Position numbers and translations under genes: made by a program. A model generated the notes under the pieces. That model saw only the letters and a program-made list of their open reading frames with translations, was not told the DNA's origin and ran no database searches. Below are positions 3,886-58,525 of a DNA stretch of 64,000 bases, piece after piece (position 1 is the first letter of the stretch; the number at the start of each line of letters is the position of its first letter). The stretch spans positions 62,001 through 126,000 of the IMG/VR virus record IMGVR_UViG_3300037010_003311. One strand, given 5' to 3'.

Positions 3886-3960
3886 ACCACAAGTTTAAAA
3901 TAGGTACCCCATGTCGGGGCGAACAATATAAAACAAAAACATTAAAATAAAGGTTAAAGA

Positions 3961-10339: not shown

Positions 10340-11332
10340 ATGCTAAAGTTTATTAGTATAAAAGATCCCCATTTAAGTTTAGGTTTTCAGAATCGGCTTC
10401 GATACGATTACCAAAGTGATATTATGAATAAATTAAATTTTATTCGTAATTATGTAGCAGAGAATCAGGTTGACGCCATTTTATTAACTGGTGATATAAC
10501 TGATTCCAATTATGAACGAAAATGGTCATTTAAACAGTATGTAAAAAATAAGAGAGCATTCCAAGCTTTAAAAGGTAATGGATCTGATGATCATGTACAG
10601 CTATTAAGCTGTATTGGGAACCACGATATGTTTTTTGGTCTCGAAGATGGAAATGATACAGTGTTTGATGAACTGGTACGGGAAAATGTAATTCATAACA
10701 TTACTAATTACCCGAAAGGGTTTACGACACCAAATTCTAATAAAGTGGTAAAAGTATATGGTGTAGATTATTCAAGTAATAAAGAAACTATATTTGAAAA
10801 ACTAAATGTTATAAATAATGATAGTTTTATTAATACTCAATATTTTAAAATTGTAGTTATGCATAACAACCTTACACCGTTACCGGAAAGATTAACTGAA
10901 TTCACTTATGATGAGTTACAGGCTAAGTTTCCAAATATCAATATTTTTATTGGTGGTCACTATCATATAGGTTTTCCCTCGGTTCAAGTAAAAGGTACCT
11001 GGTTTATAAACAATTGGAACCTCACCAGAGTAGTTCGAGATTATGACGTCACTTTAGATCAGCATACGCCAGAGTTTGAAGAAATCACATTCGATGATAA
11101 TTTAAACTTGGTATCAGTAAAGACCATAAAATTGCCGTTTAAGACGTTTGAAGAAACTTTCGTCCCAAACGCAATTAACATTATCAAAAAATCTAAACAG
11201 GAAATTTTTGAATTTTTCCAAATAGATTTTGAAGAGATTGTTACAAAACAAACTGACTTAGAAATTCTAGAGCAGTTTGATTACGAACCAGAAATTATAC
11301 AACTAGCCTTACAATATCTAAATGGTGATTAA
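10340..11332 (+). CDS. sbcD: Mre11/SbcD-like metallophosphoesterase nuclease
   Basis: DPH, LTGDITD, GNHD, VMHN, GHYH motifs. Confidence 0.85.
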   Translation: MLKFISIKDPHLSLGFQNRLRYDYQSDIMNKLNFIRNYVAENQVDAILLTGDITDSNYERKWSFKQYVKNKRAFQALKGNGSDDHVQLLSCIGNHDMFFGLEDGNDTVFDELVRENVIHNITNYPKGFTTPNSNKVVKVYGVDYSSNKETIFEKLNVINNDSFINTQYFKIVVMHNNLTPLPERLTEFTYDELQAKFPNINIFIGGHYHIGFPSVQVKGTWFINNWNLTRVVRDYDVTLDQHTPEFEEITFDDNLNLVSVKTIKLPFKTFEETFVPNAINIIKKSKQEIFEFFQIDFEEIVTKQTDLEILEQFDYEPEIIQLALQYLNGD

Positions 11333-15064: not shown

Positions 15065-15460
15065 ATGATACCAGTTTCAAAATTACTTGGCCCTATTAAG
15101 GATGAAAAAACTATGGAAATTAGGGAAACCTATGATCCAGAATGTGCTCACTATATAGTTGTGAATAAAAAATCAAATCATGGTTATAATGTAAAATTTA
15201 TTACCGATAAACCAAACAATAGTATTACCCCAACCTGTAATGTTAAGGTTTCGTGTAATTGTGATAATTTTCAATTTATGTATGCGTATGTATTATATAA
15301 AAATGATGGTTTATATAATCCCCATCGTTTAGTACTGACACCACCAGTTGAGAAAAATCCAAATATGATTATTGGAGCGTGTAAGCATGTAAAATTAGCC
15401 CTCTATAGAAAAATGACTAATAATGTACAAAAACTTGCAACTACGGATGGGGATATCTAA
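15065..15460 (+). CDS. SWIM zinc-finger protein
   Basis: VSCNCDNF...ACKHV (CxC...CxH). Confidence 0.75.
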   Translation: MIPVSKLLGPIKDEKTMEIRETYDPECAHYIVVNKKSNHGYNVKFITDKPNNSITPTCNVKVSCNCDNFQFMYAYVLYKNDGLYNPHRLVLTPPVEKNPNMIIGACKHVKLALYRKMTNNVQKLATTDGDI

Positions 15461-16782: not shown

Positions 16783-16863
16783 ATTACAATATTGTATCTA
16801 AGTAGTTAAACGGCTCCAAGAGCTAAACCAAAAACCTATAAAGGCATTAAATGGAAATTTTAA
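16690..16863 (+). pseudogene. Decayed NUMOD1/IENR1-type homing-endonuclease tail at the beta' split
   Basis: The beta'N frame reads KKIISKF...RKSIKSVSVNFGK*ITILYLSS*TAPRAKPKTYKGIKWKF*, resembling NUMOD1 (SI.EA...G....KT.KG..WK) with two internal stops. Confidence 0.5.
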
Positions 16864-18740
16864 ACAATATGGTCATGCATTTAAATAGTTTAAATGCAAA
16901 ACGCTTTAACAGTGACTATGATGGTGATGGTCTTGGGTGTTACTCTTTACATAGTACCCAAGCTAAAAAAGAAGCAAGGCGATATATGACGCCTATATCA
17001 AATATCCAACATGAACACAATCTCGAAATGGTGGATACGCTAGAGCATGAAAGTATTCAAGCGGCATACATGCTTTCGCTTAAGGGATGGAAAAATTTCG
17101 ATTCAAATAAAATCGAATTAACTTTACAAAACATAAGCGAATTCCAAGCAGATATAAATACAGTAATTAAAACTCCAAATATAGCAGTAAGGCTTATAGA
17201 TGAAGATATAGTATTACCATATAATTCTGTTCTAATTAACGCATCATTCGATATAGAAGAGTTAATATATACTGATAGTAGATTATTGTATAAAAAGAAT
17301 TTACTAGAACTGATTAAGCTTTTATACGACTTTGTAGAGAATGCTAAATTTCATGATAAATTACATAACTTCAATAAAGTACTACTTGAATGTAGTACAG
17401 TTGTTAGTTATTGTAATACAAGTTTTGAACTGAATCACTTTGCGGTGAATCATAAAGCAATTGAGGATTTCAAAAAAACACTTATAAATGAACCATTTAC
17501 TGGTTTCCATCAAAACCAAATGCTATTTGATACACATGTTAAAAATCTTATTTGTCATGATGAAGATAATATTCTAACGAATGTATTCAATTCTGGAGCA
17601 AGGATCAAAAATGTACAGTTGTTAAAAGCTGCTAGTAATAATGGTATCCCAACTGATATTAATGGTAGAGCATTTAAGCATAATATTAAAAACTCATTAC
17701 TTGATGGATTAACCGAAGAAGAGTTCTTTATGACTGGGGATAGTGCAAGACTAGCCTTAGCTCAAAGGCAAGATTCTATTCCAAAGGGTGGTGAACTTCA
17801 ACGGAAGATATATTTTACAACTGGATTCTTGCAACTCAATAATATTGCAGATTGTGGATCAGAAAAATATTTTACAATAGTGGTTAGTGATAGACATCAT
17901 TTAGCTTCCTTATATGGAAGATGGTATATTACTGATGATAATCCAAAACTACGTTTCGTTCGTTTAGATGATACTAAATTAATTGGTACGGAAATTAAAG
18001 TTCGTTCCCCAATTTATTGTAAGTCTGGTGATTATGCTATTTGTGATAGATGCTTTGGTTCTAAAAAACCAGATTCAGATAACATTGGTGCAGCTATTGG
18101 ATCATATATTGCGGAAAGTATCATTCAGTCAATTCTTAGAACTCACCACTTTAGTGGAGCTTTCATTACTGAGATTAAAAAAGAATTCAATGAAATTATT
18201 GAATCGTTACAATTCGAATCACCTAACATTATAAAAGGTAGTCCAGAAAATATTGATCGGTATAAACAATATCTTTTAGATAATTACTATAAGGAAGAAG
18301 ATTTTACTATAACCAAAACTAGTAAAAACTGCTACGAAATTGATGTTATTAATTTACCATTAAATGATGACTCTGTTAAAAAACTACAGGTTATTACTTC
18401 ATATATTGATAAGAATCGAGATAGTGATAATTTGATTTCACCAGAAGAGATATATAAATTTCTTAAAAATGAAATCATTATGCCTAATGATATTTTGAGT
18501 ATATATGTTGAATTAATTATTGGTATTCTATTTTACGATGAAGATGGTATTATGATTAGATATTCTGATAAAGAGATTAACTTCCAGTTGGCTTTAAAGA
18601 ATGTTATTTCGCATATTGATCCAAGAATGTCTTTCTTCTATGGATTCAACGATGGTAAGATTAGTGATTGTTATGATGCCGAAACCGAGGGAACGGTCCT
18701 AAAACATATGTATCAGGATTTAACTGATATCTATTATTAA
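16851..18740 (+). CDS. rpoC: Multisubunit RNA polymerase beta' C-terminal piece (catalytic)
   Basis: RFNSDYDGD (NADFDGD equivalent), bridge helix GELQRKI, DCGS, RSPIYC...CDRCFG, trigger loop IAESIIQSILRTHH. Confidence 0.95.
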   Translation: MEILNNMVMHLNSLNAKRFNSDYDGDGLGCYSLHSTQAKKEARRYMTPISNIQHEHNLEMVDTLEHESIQAAYMLSLKGWKNFDSNKIELTLQNISEFQADINTVIKTPNIAVRLIDEDIVLPYNSVLINASFDIEELIYTDSRLLYKKNLLELIKLLYDFVENAKFHDKLHNFNKVLLECSTVVSYCNTSFELNHFAVNHKAIEDFKKTLINEPFTGFHQNQMLFDTHVKNLICHDEDNILTNVFNSGARIKNVQLLKAASNNGIPTDINGRAFKHNIKNSLLDGLTEEEFFMTGDSARLALAQRQDSIPKGGELQRKIYFTTGFLQLNNIADCGSEKYFTIVVSDRHHLASLYGRWYITDDNPKLRFVRLDDTKLIGTEIKVRSPIYCKSGDYAICDRCFGSKKPDSDNIGAAIGSYIAESIIQSILRTHHFSGAFITEIKKEFNEIIESLQFESPNIIKGSPENIDRYKQYLLDNYYKEEDFTITKTSKNCYEIDVINLPLNDDSVKKLQVITSYIDKNRDSDNLISPEEIYKFLKNEIIMPNDILSIYVELIIGILFYDEDGIMIRYSDKEINFQLALKNVISHIDPRMSFFYGFNDGKISDCYDAETEGTVLKHMYQDLTDIYY

Positions 18741-18749
18741 GGGTATCTA

Positions 18750-19013
18750 ATGAATAATAATCTAGATAAAATTGCATCTAAGAACCAAACTAAACGATTG
18801 GTGCTTATTAATGGTTTAGGAGATACCGAAGTAGATTATATTTTGGAAGATGATAACATCGATAATGCAATCTATTATCTTTTATGCGCGAGGAACCATT
18901 TAATTGAACATAGTGATTTTCCATTAACCGCTTTAACTAGATTAGAGATTGCAGCAGCTGCAATCAGCCAAGCAATAATGGAAGTGGAAGCTAAAACAAT
19001 TTTCAGGACATGA
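18750..19013 (+). CDS. Hypothetical protein within RNAP cluster
   Basis: 87 aa, RBS AAGGG. Confidence 0.7.
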   Translation: MNNNLDKIASKNQTKRLVLINGLGDTEVDYILEDDNIDNAIYYLLCARNHLIEHSDFPLTALTRLEIAAAAISQAIMEVEAKTIFRT

Positions 19014-19025
19014 GGGAGATAAAGA

Positions 19026-20300
19026 ATGAATTTAATACCAACTAAAGTGAGAACCGTATCCAATTCGGAATGGTACGCTATCCCAGATTTTAGAAAGGAT
19101 GATCATTATAAAGTACTAGATATATTAAACGATATGTTTAAAAAGTTATCTAATTATTTTAACATCACTTATAAAATTGATTTTATAAATAAACTTGATG
19201 ATGATAAAACTTACTTGAGCGAGTATGCTACATATATGAACTTGATAGTAATAAATCTTGCAGTAAATGGTGTACCAGAGAAACCTATAAAAATCCGTTA
19301 TCCAGCTTTAGTGAATGATAACTTCTTTATTATGAATGGTAGTATCTATGTACCACTTATGTTTTTAGAAAGAAGTCCGATCGATAGAATAAATGAAATA
19401 GATGAAACAACTGGTAAAAATATTGGCCGTATATTATTAAATATTTTACCATCATTTAATATTACATTTGATTTCGTGAATGAACGTATTCTTTATCGTG
19501 GTAAAAAAGCTATTACGACTAATATGTTTTTTAGTCTTATTTATAATAGGCCCGAAGATCAGGAGTATGTTAAATACCTCATTGATAATGGTATTATGAC
19601 AGATTTCTTTGATTCTGTTTCGGAAGAGGATATGAAAACATTTATTAAATCCTTCGATCTTAAATCACTAAACATTTTAAAAAATGAAGAACCAATCAGC
19701 ATTGTAGATTTCTTCGATGAGTTATTATTACTTGATTACTTTAAAGGAATGTTTGAAAAAATCTATGGTGTTAGTACCATTCGGGAGATCTTAAAAATTA
19801 TAGTCAATTACTATTTGAATGATACATTTATTGATATGTCTGATCTTAGAAATAGGCGTATAGTTGTTAATGAATATCTTATTAATCCTATATTTGAATA
19901 CTATTTAAGATTCCTGAGAAATATTACGGAGAAACATGACCCAGATGCGAAAAAAGTTTTTAGTCCTACTATGAATCCACAAGTTGTTATAACTAGTGGT
20001 TTTAGAGGTATGATGCATGGTGGTTCACATTATAATATTTCATTACCATATCCAACACCATTACTTTATAAGGTGTCTCAAAGCATTTATATTGTTGGGG
20101 AAAAGGTACCAAGAAGTTGGACGAGTAATCATCCAAGTGCTTATGGTAAAATATGCCCAATTTCGGTATCTGCTCAAAACATGGGAGAAAACCTAGTATT
20201 TACTAGTGATGTTCGTTTAGATAAATATGGCCTAATAGAAGGTACTAAAGCTATTTTAGTTGAGCGACAAGAGGATGATGTAGATGCACCCAAAACTTAA
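19026..20300 (+). CDS. rpoB: Multisubunit RNA polymerase beta N-terminal piece
   Basis: FFIMNGSIYVPLMFLERSP and HPSAYGKICPI match FIINGTERV..QLHRSP and HPTHYGRICPI. Confidence 0.85.
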   Translation: MNLIPTKVRTVSNSEWYAIPDFRKDDHYKVLDILNDMFKKLSNYFNITYKIDFINKLDDDKTYLSEYATYMNLIVINLAVNGVPEKPIKIRYPALVNDNFFIMNGSIYVPLMFLERSPIDRINEIDETTGKNIGRILLNILPSFNITFDFVNERILYRGKKAITTNMFFSLIYNRPEDQEYVKYLIDNGIMTDFFDSVSEEDMKTFIKSFDLKSLNILKNEEPISIVDFFDELLLLDYFKGMFEKIYGVSTIREILKIIVNYYLNDTFIDMSDLRNRRIVVNEYLINPIFEYYLRFLRNITEKHDPDAKKVFSPTMNPQVVITSGFRGMMHGGSHYNISLPYPTPLLYKVSQSIYIVGEKVPRSWTSNHPSAYGKICPISVSAQNMGENLVFTSDVRLDKYGLIEGTKAILVERQEDDVDAPKT

Positions 20301-21165
20301 AAATATTTTAGAATTTAGTTATAAGTATAGTAATATTTATGACTGTTCTACGCCAAGTTTTGGCCCTTATGATTATCAGCTTTTAGAAAAAAAATTATCT
20401 GAAAATATGGATAACTATCGCGATGTGTATACTATGATGGCAAATACACTTTTTGGTGATGGCGAAAATATAAATATTTTAGAAGTTTTAAATTATGCTG
20501 TTATGCATAGTGCTCTCCAATATAATTTTTGGTATGGTTCTCCAGATTATAAACCATTTAATAGTGGTATAATAACCGAGTATATAATTGGAAAAGATTA
20601 CCAGAAACTAGAGGATATTATAAAAAATAGTGTTATTGGTTTTATACCAGATCGATTAGAAACCTTAAATAATTTAAGAACTTTATTGAGCAATGGTTAT
20701 TTAGAATCGCGGTTTTTCGCAAAAAATTTTAATCTCCACGATTTTATAGATTTTTTATTAGAACAAAAATGTTTTAATAATGATCCACTGTTTAAAAAAG
20801 GTATCTTAGTTATAATGGAGGTTAGACGTATACTTGACCATTGGCCAAATAAGGATGATAGTATTTATCGAAAGCTGGATAAAACTTTCGACACCGTAGA
20901 AATATCGACTTATCCAATCCCGGCCGATTACCGAATCCCGGAATACTTAGCAAGCGTCGGAGCTCAAACCGAGACTCTAAATAAATATGTAATCGAAAAT
21001 AGTATTGAAGAAATAGGCATTCGAACAACTTCAATACGTTTAATAAACGAATTACATCAAATAAGTAAACTTCCAACCTATGTCCTAGATTCATTAATCT
21101 TTATAGATCATAAAGTTAATAAATCAGAATCCAAACATCATCTTTGTATGACAACTAACTATTAA
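20284..21165 (+). CDS. Queuosine-salvage Qng1/DUF2419-like N-glycosylase/hydrolase
   Basis: ALQYNFW, DPLFKKGIL, PADYRIPEYL, EEIGIRTTSI, VLDSLIF and C-terminal HHLCMTTNY follow the order and spacing of the DUF2419 motifs (NFcFW, KRAQ, ADYrvP, EveIR, iD..lW, hHrtr..yY). Confidence 0.75.
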   Translation: MHPKLKNILEFSYKYSNIYDCSTPSFGPYDYQLLEKKLSENMDNYRDVYTMMANTLFGDGENINILEVLNYAVMHSALQYNFWYGSPDYKPFNSGIITEYIIGKDYQKLEDIIKNSVIGFIPDRLETLNNLRTLLSNGYLESRFFAKNFNLHDFIDFLLEQKCFNNDPLFKKGILVIMEVRRILDHWPNKDDSIYRKLDKTFDTVEISTYPIPADYRIPEYLASVGAQTETLNKYVIENSIEEIGIRTTSIRLINELHQISKLPTYVLDSLIFIDHKVNKSESKHHLCMTTNY

Positions 21166-21179
21166 AAAGGAAAATAATT

Positions 21180-21851
21180 ATGGAAAACACACAAGCATCA
21201 CAACAATTCACAGGAACATTTCGTTATGGTTTAGTAGCAATTTCAAAAGCTGGAAAAGAATATTTTACAGGAGTTGTAGGCTTTACTAATGCCTCAGGTG
21301 GTCAAGATCAATACAAAGTTACAAGCTTTGATAAAAATACAGTTGCTTATGCTAAACAGTATGGAGCATATAATGAAAATAAAATGGCTCTTAGTGGTAA
21401 AAATGTTACACTAACAAGTAAATCTGGTTTCGCTTTAAGTTCTTATTCTAATAAATATGAACTACTTTTTGAAACCATGGATATTGAGGGTTGCCCATTC
21501 CAAGCTCCAGCTGAAGCACCACAAGGTTATTCTGCTCCAACAATGGGTATCCAAGCTCCAACTGTAGGTATGGGATTGCCACAGCCAGGCATGATGGCCG
21601 CTCCACAAATGGCTGCTCCACAAATGGCTGGGATGGCTGCTCCACAAATGCCAGGTATGATGGCTGCTCCACAAATGCCAGGTATGATGGCTACGCCAGG
21701 TATGATGACTGCACCAGTTGAAATGCAACAACCGGCTCCTATGCAACAACCTGCGGCAATGACTGCTCCAGTTGAAATGCAACAACCTGCGGCAATGACT
21801 GCTCCAGCTGTACCAGGTATGATGCCTGCACCACAAATTCCAGGGATGTAA
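21180..21851 (+). CDS. Putative ssDNA-binding (OB-fold-like) protein with M/A/P/Q-rich repeat tail
   Basis: About 105-aa beta-rich aromatic N-domain then low-complexity tail; strong RBS. Confidence 0.45.
   Translation: MENTQASQQFTGTFRYGLVAISKAGKEYFTGVVGFTNASGGQDQYKVTSFDKNTVAYAKQYGAYNENKMALSGKNVTLTSKSGFALSSYSNKYELLFETMDIEGCPFQAPAEAPQGYSAPTMGIQAPTVGMGLPQPGMMAAPQMAAPQMAGMAAPQMPGMMAAPQMPGMMATPGMMTAPVEMQQPAPMQQPAAMTAPVEMQQPAAMTAPAVPGMMPAPQIPGM
21591..21810 (+). repeat. Coding tandem repeats (MAAPQ x4; MTAPVEMQQPA x2)
   Basis: GCTCCACAAATG repeated four times; GCACCAGTTGAAATGCAACAACC-type unit twice. Confidence 0.9.
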
Positions 21852-21863
21852 ATAACTTATTTA

Positions 21864-21893
21864 GGGGGGGGTACAGTTATTGTACCTCTTTTT
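21864..21893 (+). terminator. Intrinsic terminator
   Basis: GGGGGTACA-GTTAT-TGTACCTC stem followed by TTTTT. Confidence 0.8.
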
Positions 21894-21930
21894 ATACCTA
21901 AAAATATAAATTAAAGTTTAAAGGAAATAA

Positions 21931-23907
21931 ATGAGTATTGTTAGTCCCCAAATTGAGGTATTTGAACCATTTTCCTCTAACACTGATGCTAGTAGAACAA
22001 ACATGAGTTCAAAGCAGTTACTACAGGTTATTGTTGCTGAAGGTACCGAGATACCATACATTCTAAATAAAAACTATAAAGTTATGACGACCGTTAATTC
22101 ACCATTTGTAAAAATTGCTGAAGAAGATGGAGTAGTAATCTACAACAATAATAATCTTATTGGATATGTATATAAAGAAACAAAACGAATTACCTTTGAC
22201 CATTTACCAGATACTAAGAAAATGGTAAACAATAGCCTAACGCTGAAATATATAACCAAAGAGCCTAGATTTAAAAAGGGTGACGTCCTTTGGGATTATA
22301 CTAATCAAGATCCTGAAACGAATATGCCAAGAACTGGATATAGAGCAAACATTATGTATTCTAGCTTCTTTGGTTTTAATGCGGATGATGCAATGGTTAT
22401 ATCTGAAAGTTTTGCTGAGAGATGCCGCATAGATTATTCGGAAAAAATATTTATGCCTATAACACCGGAAATTAAATACATTATGAATGAAGGTAGGAAT
22501 AAGTATTTAACTGGACCAGATGAAATTACACCAAATAGTTTTTATATTCAATACAATAAAATCGATACATCTAAACATTTTTTAACCGAATTAATAAATG
22601 TAAATAATTCTGTTTCAAAATCAGCTAGTAAAATGGTTGAAGCGATTGCTGGTGGAAAAATTTTATCTTTAAAAATTCATAAGCTTTCAGATTTATCTTT
22701 CAATGAATTAAAAGCTAGATATGTTTATACTCCAACGTTAATTGATGAGATTGAGGTATTGTATAATGATCAAGCTGGAATTCATAAACATATTCTGGAT
22801 TCATTGCGGTTGTATATGCAAGAAGATGACGCTGAAGCTATTCATTCAAAACTGATTAAAAACTATTATTCAGTAACTGAGTTCAATGATATATTTATGA
22901 CGGATTTAGCGGATAATTATAAGATTGATAAAGACTCGATTGATATAGTTATCGAACTTGAAATTCATAAAGATCTACCAACTTGTACGGGTGATAAATT
23001 TACCAATCTATTTGCTGGTAAAGGAGTTGTCTCATTAATCATTCCTGACGAATTAATGCCGAGAGATGAAGCTAATGATCCAGCTGATATCATCTTTAAT
23101 CCACTTGGATTATTTGGTCGTAATAACTGGGGAACAGTTTTTGAAATGGCTTTAGCTAAGATAATAGAAGATGTTGAAGAAAACATTAATAATCGAACTC
23201 AAACCCTTAGACGATTAAAGTTTATTAATAAGCATTTTATTCGTCTATACGATGAAGACTACTATCATAACGTAGAACAACTTATCGAAAACTTTGATGA
23301 GCGGTTTGATGAGTTTAAACATCAAGTACAAACCAAAGGGTTTTTTCTATATGTTGAAAATTTTCCAAAAATAGCATATAATGATTTCATTAATGATTTT
23401 GTAAATCCATATGAGGCAACATTTAATGTCAATATAACTAAGAAAGAGAAAACTATCTTTTCAAAAGAGTTGATGCAATTTATGCGAGATAAAGGATTTA
23501 AAACAACTTTGTTTAACTCAGCTCAGGATATTGAACAAGATGTTTATTTTGGTCGTAATTATTATATGAAACTTTTCCATACTGCCTGGTCAAAATATAA
23601 TGCCGTTGGTTTTAGTTCAAGCTACTCACGTATAACTGGACAACCAGCACGGGGTCGTAAAAACAAAGGTGGTTTACATATCAGTTGGCAAACTTTTGCG
23701 GCATTACTTGGTTATAAAACTAAGAATGCAGTTCTAAAAGAATTCTACTCTATTAAAGCGGATGTTGCTATAGCTGATAAAAAGATTTTCATTAATAGTT
23801 TTATAAACAGTGGTGAATACATACTAAAAAACAAGTATTTCTCACAAACTAAGCAAACTTTGACTAATGCTTTGAAAATGATAGGGATGATTTTTAAGAG
23901 TGATTGA
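21931..23907 (+). CDS. rpoB: Multisubunit RNA polymerase beta C-terminal piece
   Basis: PFSSNTDASRTNMSSKQ, GFNADDAMVISES, GDKFTNLFAGKGVVS, DIIFNPLG, YMKLFH, YSRITGQP.RGR..KGG. Confidence 0.93.
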   Translation: MSIVSPQIEVFEPFSSNTDASRTNMSSKQLLQVIVAEGTEIPYILNKNYKVMTTVNSPFVKIAEEDGVVIYNNNNLIGYVYKETKRITFDHLPDTKKMVNNSLTLKYITKEPRFKKGDVLWDYTNQDPETNMPRTGYRANIMYSSFFGFNADDAMVISESFAERCRIDYSEKIFMPITPEIKYIMNEGRNKYLTGPDEITPNSFYIQYNKIDTSKHFLTELINVNNSVSKSASKMVEAIAGGKILSLKIHKLSDLSFNELKARYVYTPTLIDEIEVLYNDQAGIHKHILDSLRLYMQEDDAEAIHSKLIKNYYSVTEFNDIFMTDLADNYKIDKDSIDIVIELEIHKDLPTCTGDKFTNLFAGKGVVSLIIPDELMPRDEANDPADIIFNPLGLFGRNNWGTVFEMALAKIIEDVEENINNRTQTLRRLKFINKHFIRLYDEDYYHNVEQLIENFDERFDEFKHQVQTKGFFLYVENFPKIAYNDFINDFVNPYEATFNVNITKKEKTIFSKELMQFMRDKGFKTTLFNSAQDIEQDVYFGRNYYMKLFHTAWSKYNAVGFSSSYSRITGQPARGRKNKGGLHISWQTFAALLGYKTKNAVLKEFYSIKADVAIADKKIFINSFINSGEYILKNKYFSQTKQTLTNALKMIGMIFKSD

Positions 23908-25039
23908 TTTAACTGGGTTGAAATTGTTATACCCCGAAGCTGAACCGCGGCAAATTAAAGCCGCGGTTAAATACCAAGAAAAATTTTCTTTAACTTTGGA
24001 AAATTTAAAATGCTTAAACCCAGATTGTAACAGAATGCGAAAATGGGGAGATACAGTTTCTGGTTTTTATTACACTTGCTCAAAAGAATGTTTTAATAAA
24101 ACTAAATCGATTAGAGAAAATAAAAAGTTAGAAGCCAGAATCAAAACTAGTTTATCAAAATATGGAATTAAGAATGCGGCCAGTTTACAAACTATTAAAG
24201 AACTTAAAATCAAAAATAGTAGATTAAATTATAATTGTGATAGTCCAAATACCCTAGAATCTAAAATTTTAAAAACTAAAAAAACTTGTATTGATAAATA
24301 TGGTACAAGTTGTACGGCTCAGAGAATAGAAATTAAAACGATCATTATGAAAAATAATGTTAAACATAATGTTGACTTTTCGGCTCAACGGCATATTACT
24401 AATTTAAAATATTGGGGGAATAAAAACTTTTGGATTGATAATTTTATAACAAACGATAATCATTTTGATTATATAAAATGTATGTTATATTTTAATTGTA
24501 AACAACCAACTGTTCATAATCAAATTAAAAAACTTGGTATAAAATATACCAAGACCGCAGCAACTAGTTTACAAGAACAAGCTATAATACCATATTTAGA
24601 AAGCTTAGGTGTATCGGCGGTAGCAAATGAACGGGCCATAATACCAAATCAGGAACTAGATATTTGGATACCTAGCTTAAAACTTGCAATAGAATGGAAT
24701 GGTAGCTATTGGCATAGTTATCATGAAACCATAGGGACAGGACCTAAGCAGCTAGATTATGACTTTTGTAAGTACCGGCACCAACGAAAGGCTTTAGCCT
24801 GCTTGGAGGTGGGTATTCGGTTGCTTCAGTTATATGAAGATATGAACTTAAGCAATTGGAAAGAGCAAATAGATAAATTTATAGTTTATGATCCAGACAC
24901 TGGGATAGATATATATGACTTGGATTCTGGTTGCTATCCACTTAACCCAGATTTCGAAACACTAGAACCCGAAAGCCGAATGGTGCTCAAAAACCGCACT
25001 TTATGGAACGCAGGTAAAATTAAAATTAAAAGGAAATAA
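23900..25039 (+). mobile_element. Free-standing Hef-like (PD-(D/E)xK-type) homing endonuclease gene
   Basis: ELDIWIPSLKLAIEWNGSYWHS; shares WxNKNFWI...C..YF.C.Q.T.H.Q.KKL.I with 58525-59928; overlaps the rpoB C-piece stop. Confidence 0.75.
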
Positions 25040-26923: not shown

Positions 26924-28168
26924 ATGGTACTTTCGCAGGATAATATAAAAACATTTTCATGCCATCTTAAAACAATGGGGGCTTATGTTCAGCAGCCTAA
27001 CCCAGCAATTGTTGGGTTAAGTGATTTCCAGGTTATTGGTAGTCAGGATGCAAGATCGCTATATCCAACGATTATGATTTTATGCAACATTGGTTACGAA
27101 ACATTATATGCAAGATTGTATGATACAAATATTGTTGGTAAGATGATTGGTTATATAAAACATTCATTTAACGACAAAAAGAACGTTGACCCAGCAGTGG
27201 CAGGTTTCAAGAATGCTTTACAGATATTAGTGAAAAACTATACAAACCGTAACGATATCCTAAAGAAAAAAGAATTCCAAGAGTTTACAGTTGATTATTA
27301 TTGTAAACTTTTTAAAACGATAATTTCATATCCTGGAAAAATAGAAGATATTTTTTCTCCCAAAGATGATGAAACATACTTTCTATTAAAGAGCTGCCTA
27401 TTTCCAATACTGGAAGCTATTACTTGGCTTCATGAAAATAATCGTGGTTATAATGCAACTTGTATTGATTGGGTATTTTATAATTCTGGATTTGCGAATA
27501 AATACAAGGGGCAAACATTTTATGTCTTTGAACATATAAATTCGGTTAAAACTAAGTTAGTTGAATATAGTATAGATACCATCAGTAGTTTATTAAATAC
27601 ATATCTGGTTAACCCATACGGTACTCTGTTTTATAGACACAATGATAAAAAATCATTCGAGGTTGATCTAATTATCAAAGGTATGGGTGACCGCGGTTTT
27701 ATTAAAGATCAAGGGTTGATTCTAAAAGCGATTAAATCTAAATGGAATTCTGTACCAGAATCATTAAAACGTGGTTTAAGTATTGCTGGCCATATAGATG
27801 AAACGGTTGCTAATGACCTAGTTAGTTTGGTTGGTGACTCGGATGAAAAAATGAGAGTTAAGCAACTTAATAACTTATTGTCTATTATTATGGGTACAGA
27901 TGGTATTAATGATTTAGATATTCTAGCCAAAAAAATTGAAGTAATTATCTCACAGAAAAACAATGCTAGTAATGGGGTTAAAACAACTTTGAATACCGGA
28001 TATGGTATATATGCTATGACTATTTGGGAATATGGAAATGCACTTATTGCAAACAGTATTACCAACGCTGGTAAGATTTATGGTATTAAGTTATTCCAGC
28101 AGATAGCGAGTAACATATTAACTGAAGAGCAGAACAACATTTCAAAAACGGTTGGCAATGTTGCGTAG
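26924..28168 (+). CDS. Family B DNA polymerase, central fragment (motifs A and B only)
   Basis: GAYV..P...SQDARSLYPTIM..NIGYET (motif A) and KTTLNTGYG...NSITNAG (motif B); no exonuclease domain and no YGDTDS motif C. Confidence 0.88.
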   Translation: MVLSQDNIKTFSCHLKTMGAYVQQPNPAIVGLSDFQVIGSQDARSLYPTIMILCNIGYETLYARLYDTNIVGKMIGYIKHSFNDKKNVDPAVAGFKNALQILVKNYTNRNDILKKKEFQEFTVDYYCKLFKTIISYPGKIEDIFSPKDDETYFLLKSCLFPILEAITWLHENNRGYNATCIDWVFYNSGFANKYKGQTFYVFEHINSVKTKLVEYSIDTISSLLNTYLVNPYGTLFYRHNDKKSFEVDLIIKGMGDRGFIKDQGLILKAIKSKWNSVPESLKRGLSIAGHIDETVANDLVSLVGDSDEKMRVKQLNNLLSIIMGTDGINDLDILAKKIEVIISQKNNASNGVKTTLNTGYGIYAMTIWEYGNALIANSITNAGKIYGIKLFQQIASNILTEEQNNISKTVGNVA

Positions 28169-28834: not shown

Positions 28835-30271
28835 ATGTGTAGTTTTATGGTAATAAATGGTCCAATTGAAAAGGTAGTAAAATTTACTCCAGATCATATT
28901 AGCTTCGATGATGTTATCCAAGCATTACGTGTTAAAGGCAACCTGAATGATGATATTGATTTATTTATGTATAATCATAATCTGGGGGAATTACTACAAC
29001 TTACTGCTGCAGAATTACGAGCCACCAATGAACCAAAATTTGAATATATGGGTTCGGCTTATGAAAAGTTTACTAGAACACCAGAAGATTACGAACCGGA
29101 TGATATAGTTACTTTAGTAGCATTTAGTCGGTTGGCACCAGAGATGGAAGTTGATGCGAAACAAAACACCTTGTCACAACCATATTTAAATACCAAGTAT
29201 AAAACAATTACTATGGTACATGGGACTATCCCGAAAGCCGAAGAGTTCGTACCAGAGGTACAGGTGGATACCGATATTTTTATGCACCGTAGTTTTCAGG
29301 ATTGTATCAATTATACTGAACAGGTTGGTGGTAAGATTTCAGCGGTGCAAATACCTATGACTAAACTTAGTACTATATTATGGTATGATAATGGCTTAGG
29401 TAGATTCGAATATAAATCAATGGATGGAAAAGTTTGGATTGGTACAAACATTAATTTATTTAATCATTTTTATTATTGGGCTAAATCTTTTATGCTACAA
29501 CCTGCCCCTTATATACAACTAGTTTTTCCAAAAACTTTAATTCTTGCCAAGTCGCGTATAATTTCACTTTTTAGTGGTGGGTTAGATATAACTTGTAGTA
29601 CACTAAATGTAATAGAAACTAAACTTAAACAACGCTCACAATTAAAAAGTGTGGACTTATGGTACTTTGATTGGGGCACAAGAGCTTCAGCCGAAGAACA
29701 AGCAGCTGGGCAACGCTTTAAAGATAAATTGGAGAAAGATTTCGCTACCAACGGTAGCACAGCTACCGTTAATTATGAAGTTATCCCAACAGAAGGTATG
29801 TTTAGGAATATATTACAAGCATGTGATACAACAGTTCGGTTAACCGATAAAGATGCAACCGGGGCTGGACATCATGAAGCGGAAGCTGCAATTTCATATG
29901 TACCATACCGCAACCAGTTCCTATTAACTCTTGCGGCAGCTAAAGCCGAACAACTTTATCCAGGGGAAAATGTAACTATAGTTATAGGTGCAAATCTTAG
30001 TGAAGGAATGGTTTATTTAGATAATAGTGAATCATTTGTAGATGCTATTAATAAAACTATTAAGGTTGGTGGACAAAGAACTTATAATTTCGAAGTAGTT
30101 GCCCCATTCGTAAATAGAACTAAAACCGATATGGTAGCTGAATGCTTAAAACGTGGGTATGACCTTAGTACAGCGTTTAGTTGTTATTTTCCGGTTGATG
30201 GTAAAGAATGTGGTGTATGTGGTAGCTGTTTACTTAAACAAAGGGCGTTAGAAAGAGGAGGAAATAAATAA
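28835..30271 (+). CDS. queC: Class II glutamine amidotransferase-QueC fusion (GAT-QueC)
   Basis: N-terminal Met-Cys (Ntn nucleophile); LFSGGLD, SYVPYRN, PFVNRTK, TAFSCY...CGVCGSCLLK. Confidence 0.9.
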   Translation: MCSFMVINGPIEKVVKFTPDHISFDDVIQALRVKGNLNDDIDLFMYNHNLGELLQLTAAELRATNEPKFEYMGSAYEKFTRTPEDYEPDDIVTLVAFSRLAPEMEVDAKQNTLSQPYLNTKYKTITMVHGTIPKAEEFVPEVQVDTDIFMHRSFQDCINYTEQVGGKISAVQIPMTKLSTILWYDNGLGRFEYKSMDGKVWIGTNINLFNHFYYWAKSFMLQPAPYIQLVFPKTLILAKSRIISLFSGGLDITCSTLNVIETKLKQRSQLKSVDLWYFDWGTRASAEEQAAGQRFKDKLEKDFATNGSTATVNYEVIPTEGMFRNILQACDTTVRLTDKDATGAGHHEAEAAISYVPYRNQFLLTLAAAKAEQLYPGENVTIVIGANLSEGMVYLDNSESFVDAINKTIKVGGQRTYNFEVVAPFVNRTKTDMVAECLKRGYDLSTAFSCYFPVDGKECGVCGSCLLKQRALERGGNK

Positions 30272-31035: not shown

Positions 31036-31893
31036 ATGTATAAAAAAAGAATTATGGAAGAAATTTCAATTATGGACGAGGAGTTCGAACCATTTGATAT
31101 TGCTAATTATAATGAACAACAATTAATCGATGAAGATAAAAGATCTTTTATAATTAAGATACCAGAAAAAGTAATTAATCTTATTCTTAAAAATAAAGAG
31201 ATTGATGCCATCGAATATAATGGTGTAATATGGGTTCGGGATATAGTTGAAACTTTATATCAAGTTACATTCAATCATTATCTGGTTAGAGGTTTAATTA
31301 CTAGTAACCCAGAATTTAAACCTTATATTTTTGAGGTTAAAATTTTATCGACCGAAAATAAAAAAAATACTTTAGTAAAACTATTTACTGATGCTGCGAA
31401 CAATAATCAAAATGTTATTTATCAGATCTCTAATACTTTTGGAACCGAGTTTTCTTTAGTTCAATTATCTGGAGATAATTATGTGCAACATATGTCAGCT
31501 AATCTACCTGAGAGTGAACAATTGAAAAAACATAGTTTTTTAGAGATCACTACTACTAAGGTAAATGGTTTTAATCTGGCAAATGATTTAGTACAAAATA
31601 TAAATGACATAGCCGAATATTTAGTAAATACTGGGTATAACGAATTTAATGATATTATATATCTTGGTGATGATATAGCGGATTTTGATTTGGTATTTGA
31701 ATTACGAACTAAGTTCGTTACTGGTAAGTACAATTCTTTAAATCAGTTTCGGTCAAATAGTATGGTACAGTTGACTGGATATTTAACTCAAGAACAAGTA
31801 GAAGAACTAAAAGGATCAAATCTTTGGTCAAGGCCGGTATATTCAACCTATGTATTGAAATCAGATTATTATAAGGGTAAGCATGCAAAATGA
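31036..31893 (+). CDS. Hypothetical protein
   Basis: 285 aa ORF overlapping the next gene. Confidence 0.75.
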   Translation: MYKKRIMEEISIMDEEFEPFDIANYNEQQLIDEDKRSFIIKIPEKVINLILKNKEIDAIEYNGVIWVRDIVETLYQVTFNHYLVRGLITSNPEFKPYIFEVKILSTENKKNTLVKLFTDAANNNQNVIYQISNTFGTEFSLVQLSGDNYVQHMSANLPESEQLKKHSFLEITTTKVNGFNLANDLVQNINDIAEYLVNTGYNEFNDIIYLGDDIADFDLVFELRTKFVTGKYNSLNQFRSNSMVQLTGYLTQEQVEELKGSNLWSRPVYSTYVLKSDYYKGKHAK

Positions 31894-33934
31894 TCAAATA
31901 CGAGATAGCCGAGAACTAAATATACCATCATTACAATCGGAATTAAGTACTTACCAAATTAAATACCAAGTAAGTACGAATCAGATTAATACATATAATA
32001 CAAGAATTGATCAAGATAGTAAAAAGTTAGTGGAACTAGAACTCTTTCTTAAAAAATTGGAAAGTACCCATGAATTACTTACTAAATTGAAGCAATTCAA
32101 AATGGATAGTAAAAAAGAATTTATTCTTAGGACTATTAATACAGCTCTAAAAGATATTTTTCAAAAAGATATTCGTATTGATATAGAAGCTAATTCAAAT
32201 CTCGAAAACGGCAAGATGAATATGAAGTATGATATTATCCTATTTCAAAACGATATCGAAATAGCTAGAAATGAAAAGCTTATTGAAAGTAATGGTGGTG
32301 GAGTACTTAGTGTAATCTCCATTCTATTTAAAATGTTAGTTGGCTTTATTTATAGTGAAAATAAGTTTTATATGTTCGATGAAAGTTTAAGTCAAGTATC
32401 TGAAGAGTATCGGCCAAGACTTAGTAAATTTATTCACGAATTCTGTTCTAAACAAGGTTTCACTATAGTTATGGTATCTCATACTAAAGACTTGGATGAG
32501 TACGCGGATACAATTTATTCTTTATCTGGCACATTCGATAAGAATCTAGTGCCAGTATTAAAGATAGATGAAGTTCTTGGTCACCAACCAGAGAATGATT
32601 ATATCTATGCGAAAATAAAAAATTTTCAAAGTATCGTTGATTTAGAATTCCGGTTTAAAGGCTTTACAATTATACGTGGAGAAAATAATATTGGAAAGAG
32701 TGCCTCACTAAGAGCAATCAATTCCGTAATATTTAATGACTTCGATAAAAGTCATCAGCGTATAACCAAAGATCGATCAATTGAAACGAGCATTGAATTT
32801 GGTTACTATCATAAAGATGAAGAGACCGGAGCAATAGATGATACTAAAAAAATTAGAGTCTCTTATAAAAGCCAAAAAATAAACTATGAATTCGATGGTA
32901 TGACATTTGCTGGAAAAAATCTAGCTTTTGATAAGGTTAAAGAAAAAATTGAAAGTATAGGATTCAAGTATATTAATCTGAAAGAGACTTATAAAAACTT
33001 TAAAGGTAATCTCAAGGACCAAACGGAGCGAATAAGTCTAACGACGCAACATGATGGTCTGTTTTTGATTGGTGCTAAGAATTCTGATTCTAGTAAAGTT
33101 TTTGATTTCTTATTTGATTCATATCATATTGCAAACGCTATATCTAAAATAAAAATAGATATCAATAATAATCTGAATGAATTTAACGATATTTCAGTTC
33201 GGATACTAAATGATAAGCGTATGCTAAATAAAGAGCTTATACACCAGCAAATACACTTATACAAGTACTATATTATTATGATCAAAATAAATAGATTACT
33301 TTATCATAAAGTATGGAATAAACAAAACATTCTCACAAATTTGATTTCTACAAAAACAGCTATTGAAATGGTTCTCTATATTGAACAGATGAAAGCTTCA
33401 ATCGGTATAGTTAATGCTAAATTATTAACATTTGGAATTGAAAAACTAGAAGCAAAATTAGCTACAGTAACTTCGATCATTAAATACTCAACGAGTTTAT
33501 TAGTTGTAAATAAATTGATTAGTACTAGAAATGATATTAATCGGATAATCACAAATCTAAATATTGAAAAATTAGACGCTCGATTACAAGTGGTTACTAA
33601 AATCATTAATCTTAAATATTGGAAAAATTTTATTTTAAGCACATTGCAACAAAATGCAGTTTATACGGATATACAAAATAAAATTGCAAACAATATGACA
33701 AAGGTTAATAATTATGATTTGATTATAGCTAAGATGCGTAATATAGTTAGTTATCAAGTGTTTCGTGATAACATTTTAAGATTTATGCAAGAATCGATAA
33801 GATTATCTATCGCAATTGATACTAGTACAAGCCGGTTACAATATTTAGCCGAGGCATTTAATAATCTTAAAACCGAATTCAACCTGACCCCATGCCAAAA
33901 TTGTGGCGGTATAGGTTATTCACATGTGCATTAA
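31883..33934 (+). CDS. sbcC: SbcC/Rad50-like ABC ATPase, circularly permuted
   Basis: Order: coil, signature SNGGG, Walker B YMFDES, H-loop MVSH, then KNFQS, Walker A GENNIGKS, Q-loop TTQHD, long coil, C-terminal PCQNCG hook. Confidence 0.88.
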   Translation: MQNDQIRDSRELNIPSLQSELSTYQIKYQVSTNQINTYNTRIDQDSKKLVELELFLKKLESTHELLTKLKQFKMDSKKEFILRTINTALKDIFQKDIRIDIEANSNLENGKMNMKYDIILFQNDIEIARNEKLIESNGGGVLSVISILFKMLVGFIYSENKFYMFDESLSQVSEEYRPRLSKFIHEFCSKQGFTIVMVSHTKDLDEYADTIYSLSGTFDKNLVPVLKIDEVLGHQPENDYIYAKIKNFQSIVDLEFRFKGFTIIRGENNIGKSASLRAINSVIFNDFDKSHQRITKDRSIETSIEFGYYHKDEETGAIDDTKKIRVSYKSQKINYEFDGMTFAGKNLAFDKVKEKIESIGFKYINLKETYKNFKGNLKDQTERISLTTQHDGLFLIGAKNSDSSKVFDFLFDSYHIANAISKIKIDINNNLNEFNDISVRILNDKRMLNKELIHQQIHLYKYYIIMIKINRLLYHKVWNKQNILTNLISTKTAIEMVLYIEQMKASIGIVNAKLLTFGIEKLEAKLATVTSIIKYSTSLLVVNKLISTRNDINRIITNLNIEKLDARLQVVTKIINLKYWKNFILSTLQQNAVYTDIQNKIANNMTKVNNYDLIIAKMRNIVSYQVFRDNILRFMQESIRLSIAIDTSTSRLQYLAEAFNNLKTEFNLTPCQNCGGIGYSHVH

Positions 33935-58476: not shown

Positions 58477-58525
58477 AATTCCTTTTTCTGCGACAGGAAA
58501 CCGATGGGTGGGATTATCTCCCACC
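58477..58525. repeat. 49-bp direct repeat, copy 1
   Basis: AATTCCTTTTTCTGCGACAGGAAACCGATGGGTGGGATTATCTCCCACC; 48/49 identical to 59931-59979. Confidence 0.95.

What the first reader, a model, noticed from the sequence alone, without database searches (positions are those of the whole stretch)
31883..33934. Circularly permuted SbcC/Rad50 with a C-terminal zinc hook
Seen in one uninterrupted ORF: the ABC signature, Walker B and H-loop come first (aa about 137-200), then Walker A (GENNIGKS) and the Q-loop, then a long coil ending in CQNC at the extreme C-terminus. Established: canonical Rad50/SbcC/gp46 order is Walker A, coil, CxxC, coil, signature, Walker B, and some phages split the gene in two. 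Inference: the two halves re-fused in reverse order, covalently joining the ATPase lobes and opening the coil at the hook. sbcD lies 20 kb away.
Basis: partly seen in the sequence, partly recalled or inferred. Interest (0 to 1): 0.8.

Follow-up and report, generated by a model that had tools for sequence, protein, structure and literature searches.

The report
Permuted single-chain phage SbcC/Rad50 ATPase
A jumbo phage encodes its Rad50/SbcC-type DNA-end-processing ATPase back to front, which is real and conserved in many uncultured phages but absent from every deposited phage genome searched; this is a natural rewiring of a DNA-repair machine.

Summary
Window 31883-33934 (+) is one 683-aa ORF. 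Its order is: N-terminal helix, signature-like NGGG, Walker B, H-loop, a short conserved beta linker, the N-lobe first strand, Walker A (GENNIGKS), Q-loop, about 250 aa of helix, then CQNC nine residues from the end.

It is not an assembly artefact. Independent metagenome contigs cross the junction without gaps or stops. 163 retrieved homologues have the same order.

Both halves resemble Rad50. The closest structural matches to the model are Rad50 heads. A profile of stand-alone C-halves hits Rad50 C-lobes first (1e-10).

The fused clade nests among split phage SbcC systems, such as Bacillus prophage phBC6A51. In those, a separate N-half protein already ends in CPxCG and a separate ~210-aa protein supplies the C-lobe.

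The SbcD-like nuclease at 10340-11332 belongs to the family that sits next to these genes in relatives.

The coil was already open at the hook before the fusion. The return strand is mostly missing, and AlphaFold folds the coil back on itself, so whether the CxxC acts as an apex hook is open.

This is a new variant of a known kind. Interest is moderate to high.

The parts
31883..33934 (+). Whole gene: 683-aa single-chain, circularly permuted Rad50/SbcC-family ATPase (stop codon included)
31922..32161 (+). aa 14-93: N-terminal long helix. It corresponds to the last stretch of the descending coiled-coil strand that enters the C-lobe.
   Evidence: AF2 helix 14-93 with pLDDT 87-94. The stand-alone C-half profile aligns this stretch to the coiled-coil stub of Rad50 head constructs.
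32162..32536 (+). aa 94-218: ABC C-lobe. Signature-like NGGG at 32291-32302, Walker B FYMFDE at 32366-32383, H-loop His200 at 32480-32482.
   Evidence: Invariant columns in A1/A2; PHROG 15167 at 1.5e-15; relatives' profile hits Rad50 C-lobes first, 1.2e-10.
32537..32611 (+). aa 219-243: junction joining the canonical C-terminus to the canonical N-terminus. It is a conserved beta-strand linker (P224, L226, I228, G233, P236, Y240, Y242).
   Evidence: Conservation in A1/A2; AF2 strands 224-233 and 240-248 with pLDDT 84-89; Walker B to NFQ spacing has a median of 81 aa in 133 fused homologues; no gaps or stops in independent contigs.
32612..33121 (+). aa 244-413: ABC N-lobe. First strand NFQS, Walker A GENNIGKS at 32678-32701, Q-loop Gln389 at 33047-33049.
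   Evidence: Stand-alone relative P0197 matches M. jannaschii Rad50 N-lobe at 3.4e-5. Closest structural matches to that relative's model are Rad50 N-lobes.
33122..33877 (+). aa 414-665: variable helical (coiled-coil) region. AF2 gives helices 414-516 and 519-555, a low-confidence turn at 556-561, then helix 562-665.
   Evidence: This is the most indel-rich part of the alignment, with the main indel blocks flanking aa 547-556.
33893..33916 (+). aa 671-678: CxxCxGxG (here CQNCGGIG), then YSHVH and the stop. A hook-derived zinc knuckle at the extreme C-terminus.
   Evidence: C671, C674 and G678 are invariant in 80 sequences. 139 of 147 full-length fused homologues have CxxC in the last 25 aa. 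Split N-halves end in CPxCG..H. That motif aligns residue-for-residue with the P. furiosus Rad50 hook 1L8D and resembles E. coli SbcC CPLCGSTSH.
10340..11332 (+). SbcD/Mre11-like metallophosphoesterase, the presumed nuclease partner
   Evidence: Pfam Metallophos 1.8e-9; weak NCBIfam Mre11/SbcD hits. It is a full-length homologue of the genes that directly follow split N-half genes in L006, L007 and L013. The same family lies 0.3-5 kb upstream of the fused gene in L020, L021 and L001.

Best explanation
The gene encodes the Rad50/SbcC-type ATPase subunit of this jumbo phage's SbcCD/Mre11-Rad50-like DNA-end-processing nuclease, in circularly permuted form.

Shown:
- One chain carries, in order: a remnant of the descending coil (aa 14-93), the C-lobe (signature, Walker B, D- and H-loops), a short structured linker, the N-lobe (Walker A, Q-loop), a long helical region, and a hook-type CxxC at the very end.
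- All ATPase motifs are intact and conserved.
- The architecture is conserved and under purifying selection.
- It descends from split phage SbcC systems in which the N-half protein already ends at the CxxC.
- A cognate SbcD-like nuclease family is syntenic with it.

Inferred:
- Two chains dimerise head to head around two ATP molecules (Walker A of one chain against the signature of the other), as in Rad50.
- Helix 14-93 pairs antiparallel with the first part of helix 414 onward. This forms the coiled-coil base where Mre11/SbcD normally docks.
- The distal coil has no return strand of its own and most likely folds back on itself.
- The two C-terminal cysteines, often helped by nearby histidines, bind zinc, probably between two chains, tying the arms together.
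- The complex with the product of 10340-11332 then clamps and cuts DNA ends or hairpins during phage replication and recombination.
For: Single ORF:
-.
- Independent contigs cross the junction, and the strain variants are mostly synonymous with no stops.

Conservation:
- More than 200 full-length homologues at 38-60% identity.
- 51 clusters (50%-identity level) at E<1e-30.
- 163 proteins fused in C-to-N order and none in N-to-C order among the 259 retrieved.

Rad50 kinship:
- Closest solved structures to the model are Rad50 heads (5dac_B at 1.5e-4, 5da9_B, 1f2u_C, 9a9j_A), then SMC and RecF.
- The stand-alone C-half profile hits Rad50 C-lobes first, at 1.2e-10 to 9e-9, ahead of SMC3 at 4e-6.
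- Stand-alone N-half P0197 matches M. jannaschii Rad50 at 3.4e-5. It also matches NCBIfam Rad50 models from residue 5 to the profile midpoint.
- The ten closest structural matches to the P0197 model are Rad50, apart from one related ABC ATPase.

Hook:
- Invariant C671 and C674.
- Exact motif alignment to the 1L8D hook and resemblance to the E. coli SbcC hook.

Origin:
- The fused clade nests in split forms.
- Split forms in phBC6A51, 0305phi8-36 and Tunturi_5 all end in CxxC.

Partner: SbcD-like family synteny.

Fold-back:
- Two AF2 models show it.
- Stand-alone C-halves are almost all 186-235 aa, while N-half length varies from 345 to 518 aa.
- The main indel blocks lie at the predicted turn.
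Against: - Pfam and NCBIfam matches to the window protein itself are all below curated cut-offs. The family assignment rests on transitive and structural evidence.
- N-lobe matches to OLD, GajA and RecN are about as strong as those to Rad50.
- The hook alignment alone is not statistically significant (E 0.1-0.5).
- In the window's clade the hook proline is lost, and the motif looks like a DnaJ-type CxxCxGxG knuckle.
- The AF2 models are monomers, with pLDDT below 50 at the turns, so the fold-back could be an artefact.
- In the window model the down helix (104 aa) plus the N-terminal helix (80 aa) exceed the up helix (142 aa), so the simple length balance does not close.
- sbcD is 20 kb away in this genome.
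- There is no biochemical evidence for ATPase activity, zinc binding, dimerisation or SbcD binding.
Confidence: 0.75

Rival explanations
1. Same protein and partner, but the C-terminal CxxC is not an apex hook that bridges two arms. The coil folds back, so the motif sits part-way down the arm beside the chain's own N-terminus. There it acts as an intramolecular C2H2-type zinc cap, or as a docking knuckle for another protein.
For: - Both AF2 models predict a fold-back: window up 414-555 and down 562-665; P0197 up 163-332 and down 346-428.
- In P0197 the unpaired base of the up helix (about 87 aa) matches the length of a C-half N-terminal helix.
- Many family members have one or two His within 5-10 residues after the CxxC, which could complete a four-ligand site in one chain.
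- Stand-alone C-half length does not scale with N-half length, so the distal coil cannot pair with a C-half helix.
Against: - The histidines are not invariant; several members end without any. Only the two Cys and a Gly are invariant, as expected for a half-site completed in trans.
- The motif aligns to the true Rad50 hook, which also carries a His at +8.
- AF2 monomer models tend to fold lone helices back.
Confidence: 0.35
2. It is an SMC-like/ABC ATPase of another clade (RecN-, OLD/Gabija- or condensin-like). It would work in something other than SbcCD-type end processing, for example genome compaction or counter-defence. The SbcD linkage would be incidental.
For: - Weak curated-profile scores.
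- N-lobe hits to Old, GajA, NsnB and HEC-01A in PADLOC, and to RecN and OLD in the PDB, are comparable to the Rad50 hits.
- Sources name homologues 'RecN', 'EcfA2' and 'SMC'.
- sbcD is 20 kb away in the window.
Against: - Rad50 C-lobes are clearly the best PDB matches of the C-half family.
- Rad50 heads are the closest structural matches for both models.
- There is a hook-type CPxCG motif.
- The same SbcD-like family is adjacent or within 5 kb in seven related loci.
- There is no nuclease, TOPRIM or hinge domain in the protein.
Confidence: 0.1
3. Two ordinary adjacent genes (a C-half gene and an N-half gene) wrongly joined by an assembly or sequencing error that removed a stop or frameshift near aa 219-243.
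For: Split C-half and N-half genes are common in related phages. The one 'split' row inside the fused clade (P0166) comes from an 871-nt contig.
Against: - Contigs from runs other than the probable source span the junction with zero gaps, and no variant creates a stop.
- 163 homologues from many samples are fused.
- The junction is conserved in sequence and length, with median spacing of 81 aa, and is modelled confidently as beta strands.
- There is no in-frame start with a ribosome-binding site at the junction.
Confidence: 0.02

Closest known systems
Split phage SbcC: Bacillus prophage phBC6A51 BC1852 (518 aa 'Exonuclease SbcC') + BC1855 (211 aa 'chromosome segregation ATPase') + BC1857 SbcD. 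Also Tunturiibacter phage Tunturi_5 gp181/gp14/gp177. PHROG 15167 plus 4747/1499.
   Same: - Same two building blocks: a ~210-aa protein with a short helix plus the C-lobe, and an N-lobe-plus-coil protein ending in CPxCG..H within 17 residues of its C-terminus.
- Same SbcD-like neighbour.
- The window's clade nests among these on the C-half tree.
   Different: Here the two pieces are one polypeptide, C-half first, joined by a conserved ~25-aa beta linker. No deposited phage genome (50,697 records) showed the fused form when searched with three fused queries.
Canonical Rad50 / SbcC / T4 gp46-type ATPases (E. coli SbcC, 1048 aa; archaeal Rad50 structures 3AUX, 1F2U, 3QKR, 1L8D)
   Same: - ABC head fold with Walker A, Q-loop, signature, Walker B, D-loop and H-loop.
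- A coiled-coil stub entering the C-lobe.
- A CPxCG-type zinc-hook motif.
- An Mre11/SbcD-family partner.
   Different: - Lobe order is reversed.
- The CxxC is at the C-terminus, not the midpoint.
- The descending strand is about 80 aa against about 250 aa ascending.
- The signature serine is replaced (NGGG).
- The H-loop His is Gln in a large subclade.
- Sequence similarity is below curated thresholds.
Bacillus phage 0305phi8-36 gp8 (769 aa) + gp5
   Same: Another rewiring of the same split system. gp8 ends in KCPTCNQEVSEH 21 residues from its end, and gp5 is the stand-alone C-half.
   Different: There the SbcD-like nuclease is fused in front of the N-half (nuclease, then N-lobe, coil and hook), and the C-lobe stays separate. 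Here the C-lobe is fused in front and the nuclease is separate.
Engineered Rad50 head constructs (N- and C-terminal segments co-expressed or linked after removing the coil, e.g. PDB 3AUX, 5F3W, 5DAC)
   Same: They show that the Rad50 head assembles from two segments that need not be connected through the coiled coil. The model's best PDB matches are such constructs.
   Different: Those are artificial, keep the N-to-C order, and link through the truncated coil. The phage protein links the natural termini and keeps a long coil.

Membership tests
Rad50/SbcC family (SMC-like ABC ATPases of Mre11/SbcD complexes) | ABC ATPase head with Walker A, Q-loop, signature, Walker B/D-loop and H-loop | tested here: met
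   All motifs are present and invariant or nearly so: GKS 271-273, Q389, GGG 138-140, DE 166-167, H/Q200. Closest structural matches are Rad50 heads.
Rad50/SbcC family (SMC-like ABC ATPases of Mre11/SbcD complexes) | Linear order: N-lobe, ascending coil, CxxC hook at midpoint, descending coil, C-lobe | tested here: not met
   The order here is short coil, C-lobe, linker, N-lobe, coil, CxxC at the C-terminus. E. coli SbcC shows the canonical order.
Rad50/SbcC family (SMC-like ABC ATPases of Mre11/SbcD complexes) | Significant sequence or profile similarity to Rad50/SbcC | tested here: inconclusive
   Direct matches are all below cut-off: Pfam SMC_N 0.086, AAA_23 0.048, NCBIfam Rad50 0.0023. Transitive matches are significant: window to stand-alone halves at 1e-11 to 1e-18; C-half profile to Rad50 C-lobes at 1.2e-10; P0197 to M. 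jannaschii Rad50 at 3.4e-5.
Rad50/SbcC family (SMC-like ABC ATPases of Mre11/SbcD complexes) | CxxC zinc hook that dimerises two coiled-coil arms | tested here: inconclusive
   The CxxC is invariant and motif-aligned to 1L8D and E. coli SbcC in relatives. It is terminal, however, and AF2 places it after a fold-back. Zinc binding and dimerisation are not testable here.
Rad50/SbcC family (SMC-like ABC ATPases of Mre11/SbcD complexes) | Long intramolecular antiparallel coiled coil | tested here: inconclusive
   Predicted helices are 14-93, 414-555 and 562-665. The return strand from the C-lobe is only about 80 aa. No coordinates or multimer model were available.
Rad50/SbcC family (SMC-like ABC ATPases of Mre11/SbcD complexes) | Encoded with an Mre11/SbcD-family metallophosphoesterase partner | tested here: met
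   The window gene 10340-11332 is the partner candidate. The same family is adjacent to split N-halves in L006, L007, L013 and L022, and lies 0.3-5 kb from fused genes in L020, L021 and L001. In the window itself it is 20.5 kb away.
Split phage SbcC (PHROG 15167 C-half + hook-terminal N-half) | C-half module of about 200 aa matching PHROG 15167 | tested here: met
   aa 20-211 match profile positions 10-196 of 211 at 1.5e-15. 85 stand-alone relatives were retrieved.
Split phage SbcC (PHROG 15167 C-half + hook-terminal N-half) | N-lobe + coil module ending in CxxC at the extreme C-terminus | tested here: met
   C671/C674 lie nine residues from the end. All 18 stand-alone N-halves aligned end the same way.
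Split phage SbcC (PHROG 15167 C-half + hook-terminal N-half) | The two modules are separate genes | tested here: not met
   Single ORF confirmed.
SMC / RecN / OLD-Gabija ATPases | Hinge domain (SMC), or TOPRIM/nuclease domain (OLD, GajA), or canonical lobe order | tested here: not met
   No hinge or TOPRIM match in Pfam or PADLOC. Only the Walker A region matches Old/GajA. Rad50 ranks above SMC and RecF in the structure and profile searches.

The most novel reading that the evidence does not exclude
This may be a Rad50-type machine built on a different topological principle. The two ATPase lobes are welded through their natural termini. The coiled coil is a self-paired fold-back with no return strand. 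A half-hook at the free C-terminus is completed only in trans. The DNA-entrapping ring would then be closed by a zinc site part-way up the arms, or between complexes, rather than by an apex hook. Such a ring could open at the hook without unfolding the arm. The recurrence of different fusions of the same three modules (C-lobe+N-half here; nuclease+N-half in 0305phi8-36) would mean phages have repeatedly re-partitioned the MR complex.
Probability: 0.3. Interest if true: 0.8.

Novelty: new variant of a known kind. Interest (0 to 1): 0.62.

Why it matters
- Rad50, SbcC and SMC proteins are defined by an ATPase head split by a long antiparallel coiled coil, closed at a hook or hinge. How the coil and hook transmit ATP state to the nuclease is still debated.
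- Here a large natural family joins the head lobes directly and ends the coil at a half-hook. That would give the field a natural single-chain head.
- It also provides a natural test of whether a continuous return strand and an apex hook are needed for MR-type function.
- For annotation, these genes are currently called 'hypothetical', 'RecN', 'EcfA2' or 'lipoprotein export ATPase'. In these phage lineages they should be recognised as candidates for the SbcC that jumbo phages almost always carry (PMC7824862).

Tried and rejected
- Alternative genetic code or stop read-through: treating any one stop codon as sense gives no marked ORF extension. The ORF ends in TAA, followed by a ribosome-binding site and the next start. 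Rejected.
- DNA similarity to deposited phages: none.
- tblastn of the window protein against phages: only the C-half matched, in split genes.
- tRNA scan: none found.
- The search for related loci with the 40-sequence C-half alignment: no stretch conserved enough.
- GTDB genome scan with A2: no relative. IMG/VR scan: only 4 loci, one of which is the source contig.
- Direct HMM comparison of the family's half-profiles with E. coli SbcC: not significant.
- Contexts of stand-alone C-halves P0163, P0164 and P0166: contigs too short to be informative.
- Independent origins of the fusion: the tree needs at least 4 label changes, but an AU test does not reject a single fused clade (p = 0.157). Multiple origins are therefore not claimed.
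- Literature: no paper on a permuted or hook-terminal Rad50/SbcC was found. The 2020 ABC-ATPase classification paper is not held.
I dropped that row and ran the permitted alignment A5 instead.
- Nearby Metallophos gene in L001 (14088-15101): not the cognate family. The cognate gene is at 3841-4878.
Full report
**1. What is in the sequence**

The window is AT-rich (about 30% GC) and uses the standard genetic code. It comes from a 226,657-bp viral contig, IMGVR_UViG_3300037010_003311.

Its genes mark it as a jumbo phage:
- split multisubunit RNA polymerase pieces
- rIIA
- ThyX, QueC and QueD
- a RecJ-like exonuclease and RNase H
- ribonucleotide reductase
- homing endonucleases

At 31883-33934 (+) there is one 683-aa ORF. 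AAGGG lies before its ATG. It stops at TAA, and a GGGAG ribosome-binding site plus an ATG at 33946 start the next gene.

Reading the protein against its alignments gives this order:
- a long helix (aa 14-93)
- NGGG at 137-140
- FDES at 165-168
- His200
- a conserved linker
- NFQS at 247-250
- GENNIGKS at 266-273
- Gln389
- a poorly conserved helical stretch (aa 414-665)
- CQNCGGIG at 671-678, nine residues from the end

Profile matches agree with this order. The C-terminal part of Pfam SMC_N falls on aa 42-214. N-terminal positions of AAA_23/27/29 and of an archaeal Rad50 model fall on aa 244-313. These are weak. PHROG 15167, a 211-position stand-alone 'ATPase', covers aa 20-211 at 1.5e-15.

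**2. It is a real single gene**

Four metagenome runs from microbial mat and sediment hold the sequence. Contigs from runs other than the probable source cross the junction (nt 32537-32611) with zero gaps. These are X2 record 14, X4 record 25 and X3 record 21. Of the 28 strain substitutions examined inside the ORF, 18 are synonymous, 10 are missense and none is a stop.

More than 200 proteins of 656-756 aa match over 91-98% of the length at 38-60% identity, on contigs up to 315 kb. An exhaustive search found 808 related cluster representatives, 51 of them at E<1e-30.

I classified all 259 retrieved proteins with half-profiles:

| Class | Count |
|---|---|
| Fused, C-half then N-half | 163 |
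| Stand-alone C-half (almost all 186-235 aa) | 85 |
| N-half only | 11 |
| Canonical N-to-C order | 0 |

The Walker B to NFQ spacing has a median of 81 aa across 133 fused proteins. The linker has conserved residues. AlphaFold models it confidently as beta strands (pLDDT 84-89).

**3. What family it belongs to**

- An AlphaFold model built on 80 homologues has mean pLDDT 77.8. Its closest solved structures are Rad50 heads, followed by SMC heads and RecF.
- A profile of 40 stand-alone C-halves hits Rad50 C-terminal lobes first: M. jannaschii at 1.2e-10, P. furiosus at 2.8e-9. These rank ahead of SMC3 and ABC transporters, and the alignment includes the coiled-coil stub.
- The stand-alone N-half P0197 is related to window aa 240-461 at 2e-11. 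It matches the M. jannaschii Rad50 N-lobe at 3.4e-5. It also matches NCBIfam Rad50 models from their start to their midpoint.
- The closest structural matches to the P0197 model are almost all Rad50 N-lobes.

The family assignment is thus significant, but it is transitive. The window protein alone stays below all curated cut-offs.

**4. The C-terminal cysteines**

C671 and C674 are invariant in 80 sequences. 139 of 147 full-length fused proteins have CxxC in their last 25 residues.

All 18 stand-alone N-halves aligned also end 17 residues or fewer after an invariant CxxC, usually as CPxCGQ...H. This motif aligns residue for residue with the P. furiosus Rad50 hook structure 1L8D: CPTCGQiinkdH against CPVCGReltdeH. 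The E-value is only 0.3. The motif also resembles the sole CxxC of E. coli SbcC, CPLCGSTSH, at residue 506 of 1048.

In the window's own clade the proline is lost and the motif reads CxxCxGxG[YF], often followed by HxH. I take the motif to be derived from the hook. Its zinc chemistry is untested.

**5. Where it came from**

Deposited phages carry the same system as separate genes:
- Bacillus prophage phBC6A51 has a 518-aa 'SbcC' ending in CPLCESPMSFDHSH, then two small ORFs, a 211-aa C-half, one ORF, and SbcD.
- Tunturi_5 has a 485-aa N-half ending in CGKCG near an annotated SbcD-like gene. Its C-half gene is about 107 kb away.
- In 0305phi8-36, gp8 is a nuclease-plus-N-half fusion ending in CPTC, and gp5 is the C-half.

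On a tree of the C-half domain (136 rows), the window's clade has 50 fused rows plus one 'split' row from an 871-nt contig. It has 98% SH-aLRT support and lies inside the stand-alone forms. In a locus (L013) from its sister group the gene order is C-half, four small genes, N-half, then the SbcD-like gene. Deleting the intervening genes and the stop would give the fused form.

Two other fused proteins, P0187 and P0228, fall elsewhere on the tree. A single origin is nevertheless not rejected (AU p = 0.157). Searching 50,697 deposited phage genomes with three fused queries found only split arrangements. 185,579 GTDB species genomes gave nothing.

**6. The partner nuclease**

The metallophosphoesterase at 10340-11332 (Pfam 1.8e-9, with weak Mre11/SbcD model hits) is a full-length homologue of the genes that directly follow split N-half genes in L006, L007 and L013. 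A profile of this family finds a member in every related locus examined:

| Locus | Form | Position of the SbcD-like gene |
|---|---|---|
| L020 | fused | 0.3 kb upstream |
| L021 | fused | 4.4 kb upstream |
| L001 | fused | 5.1 kb upstream |
| L022 | split | between the N-half and C-half genes |

The 20-kb separation in the window is therefore a local rearrangement of a conserved linkage. No canonical SbcC was found among the window ORFs that I scanned. Jumbo phages almost universally carry SbcC and SbcD (PMC7824862).

**7. How it most likely works**

Shown:
- an intact, conserved ABC catalytic set in one chain
- Rad50-like lobes
- a hook-type motif
- a syntenic SbcD-like partner

Inferred from what is known of Rad50 and SbcC:
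- ATP-driven head-to-head dimerisation
- docking of the nuclease on the coiled-coil base, formed here by helix 14-93 and the start of helix 414 onward
- DNA clamping and cutting

The new element is the coil. Stand-alone C-halves are almost all 186-235 aa, while N-halves range from 345 to 518 aa. The distal coil therefore cannot be paired with a return strand from the C-lobe.

Both AlphaFold models fold it back on itself:

| Model | Up helix | Turn | Down helix |
|---|---|---|---|
| Window protein | 414-555 | 556-561 | 562-665 |
| P0197 | 163-332 | 333-345 | 346-428 |

The main indel blocks of the alignment flank the predicted turn. In P0197 the unpaired base of the up helix (about 87 aa) matches the length of a C-half helix. 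In the window protein the lengths do not balance exactly (104 + 80 against 142 aa).

If the fold-back is real, the CxxC lies part-way down the arm, next to the chain's own N-terminus. There it could bridge two arms through one zinc, or cap the arm within one chain. These points are inference from monomer models with low confidence at the turns.

**8. Verdict**

- The coil was already open at the hook in the split ancestors.
- The return strand is largely absent, so 'circular permutation' is accompanied by a re-partitioned coil.

This is a new variant of a known kind. It is widespread in uncultured jumbo phages, unannotated or misnamed in databases, and not described in the literature I could search.

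Noticed in passing
window 8213-8815 and 8808-9428 (+): ThyX (Pfam Thy1) is encoded in two overlapping ORFs covering profile positions 2-74 and 55-185 of 191. It is either a split or a frameshifted thyX.
   Followed up: no
window 15460-25039 (+) and 58525-59928 (-): Multisubunit RNA polymerase beta/beta' is in several separate ORFs (15460-16782, 16851-18740, 21931-23907). An HNH/homing-endonuclease ORF (23900-25039) abuts the last piece. A second homing endonuclease is on the minus strand.
   Followed up: no
window 26924-28168 (+): A 414-aa ORF matches only positions 382-550 of an 856-position phage DNA polymerase profile. It may be one piece of a split polymerase.
   Followed up: no
window 9444-10064 and 28835-30271 (+); L018 2630-4336: QueD, and a QueC with a ~240-aa N-terminal extension, point to a 7-deazaguanine DNA-modification pathway. 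A GATase_6+QueC gene also lies right after a distant fused SbcC-like gene in L018.
   Followed up: no
L023 1516-3825 (Bacillus phage 0305phi8-36 gp8): gp8 is a fusion of an SbcD-like metallophosphoesterase with the SbcC N-half (Walker A at residue 367). It ends in KCPTCNQEVSEH at residue 749 of 769. gp5 is the separate C-half. This is a third way of partitioning the same three modules.
   Followed up: partly
window 32233-32256 and 33111-33131: In all four metagenome runs, a high-depth ~9.7-kb contig of some other element carries 21-24-nt matches to these two spots inside the ORF, 26 nt apart in that contig (tables 5c and 8). This is probably a chance AT-rich match.
   Followed up: no
window about 36000: Gene orientation switches from + to - here, and cumulative GC skew peaks at the same place.
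   Followed up: no
window 31883-33931 (protein-atlas neighbours): Structural neighbours in the ESM Atlas include two bacterial (mostly Pseudomonadota) AAA_23 clusters of 611 and 833 aa. They align across both head halves in the same order as the query (query residues 57-427 and 50-622, TM 0.42-0.47). They may be permuted relatives in bacteria. No identifiers were available, and the GTDB scan found none.
   Followed up: partly
window 3961-8022 (+): A 1353-aa ORF has only its first ~165 residues matching rIIA profiles. In relative L001 an rIIB gene and a 902-aa unknown gene lie between the SbcD-like gene and the fused SbcC-like gene.
   Followed up: no
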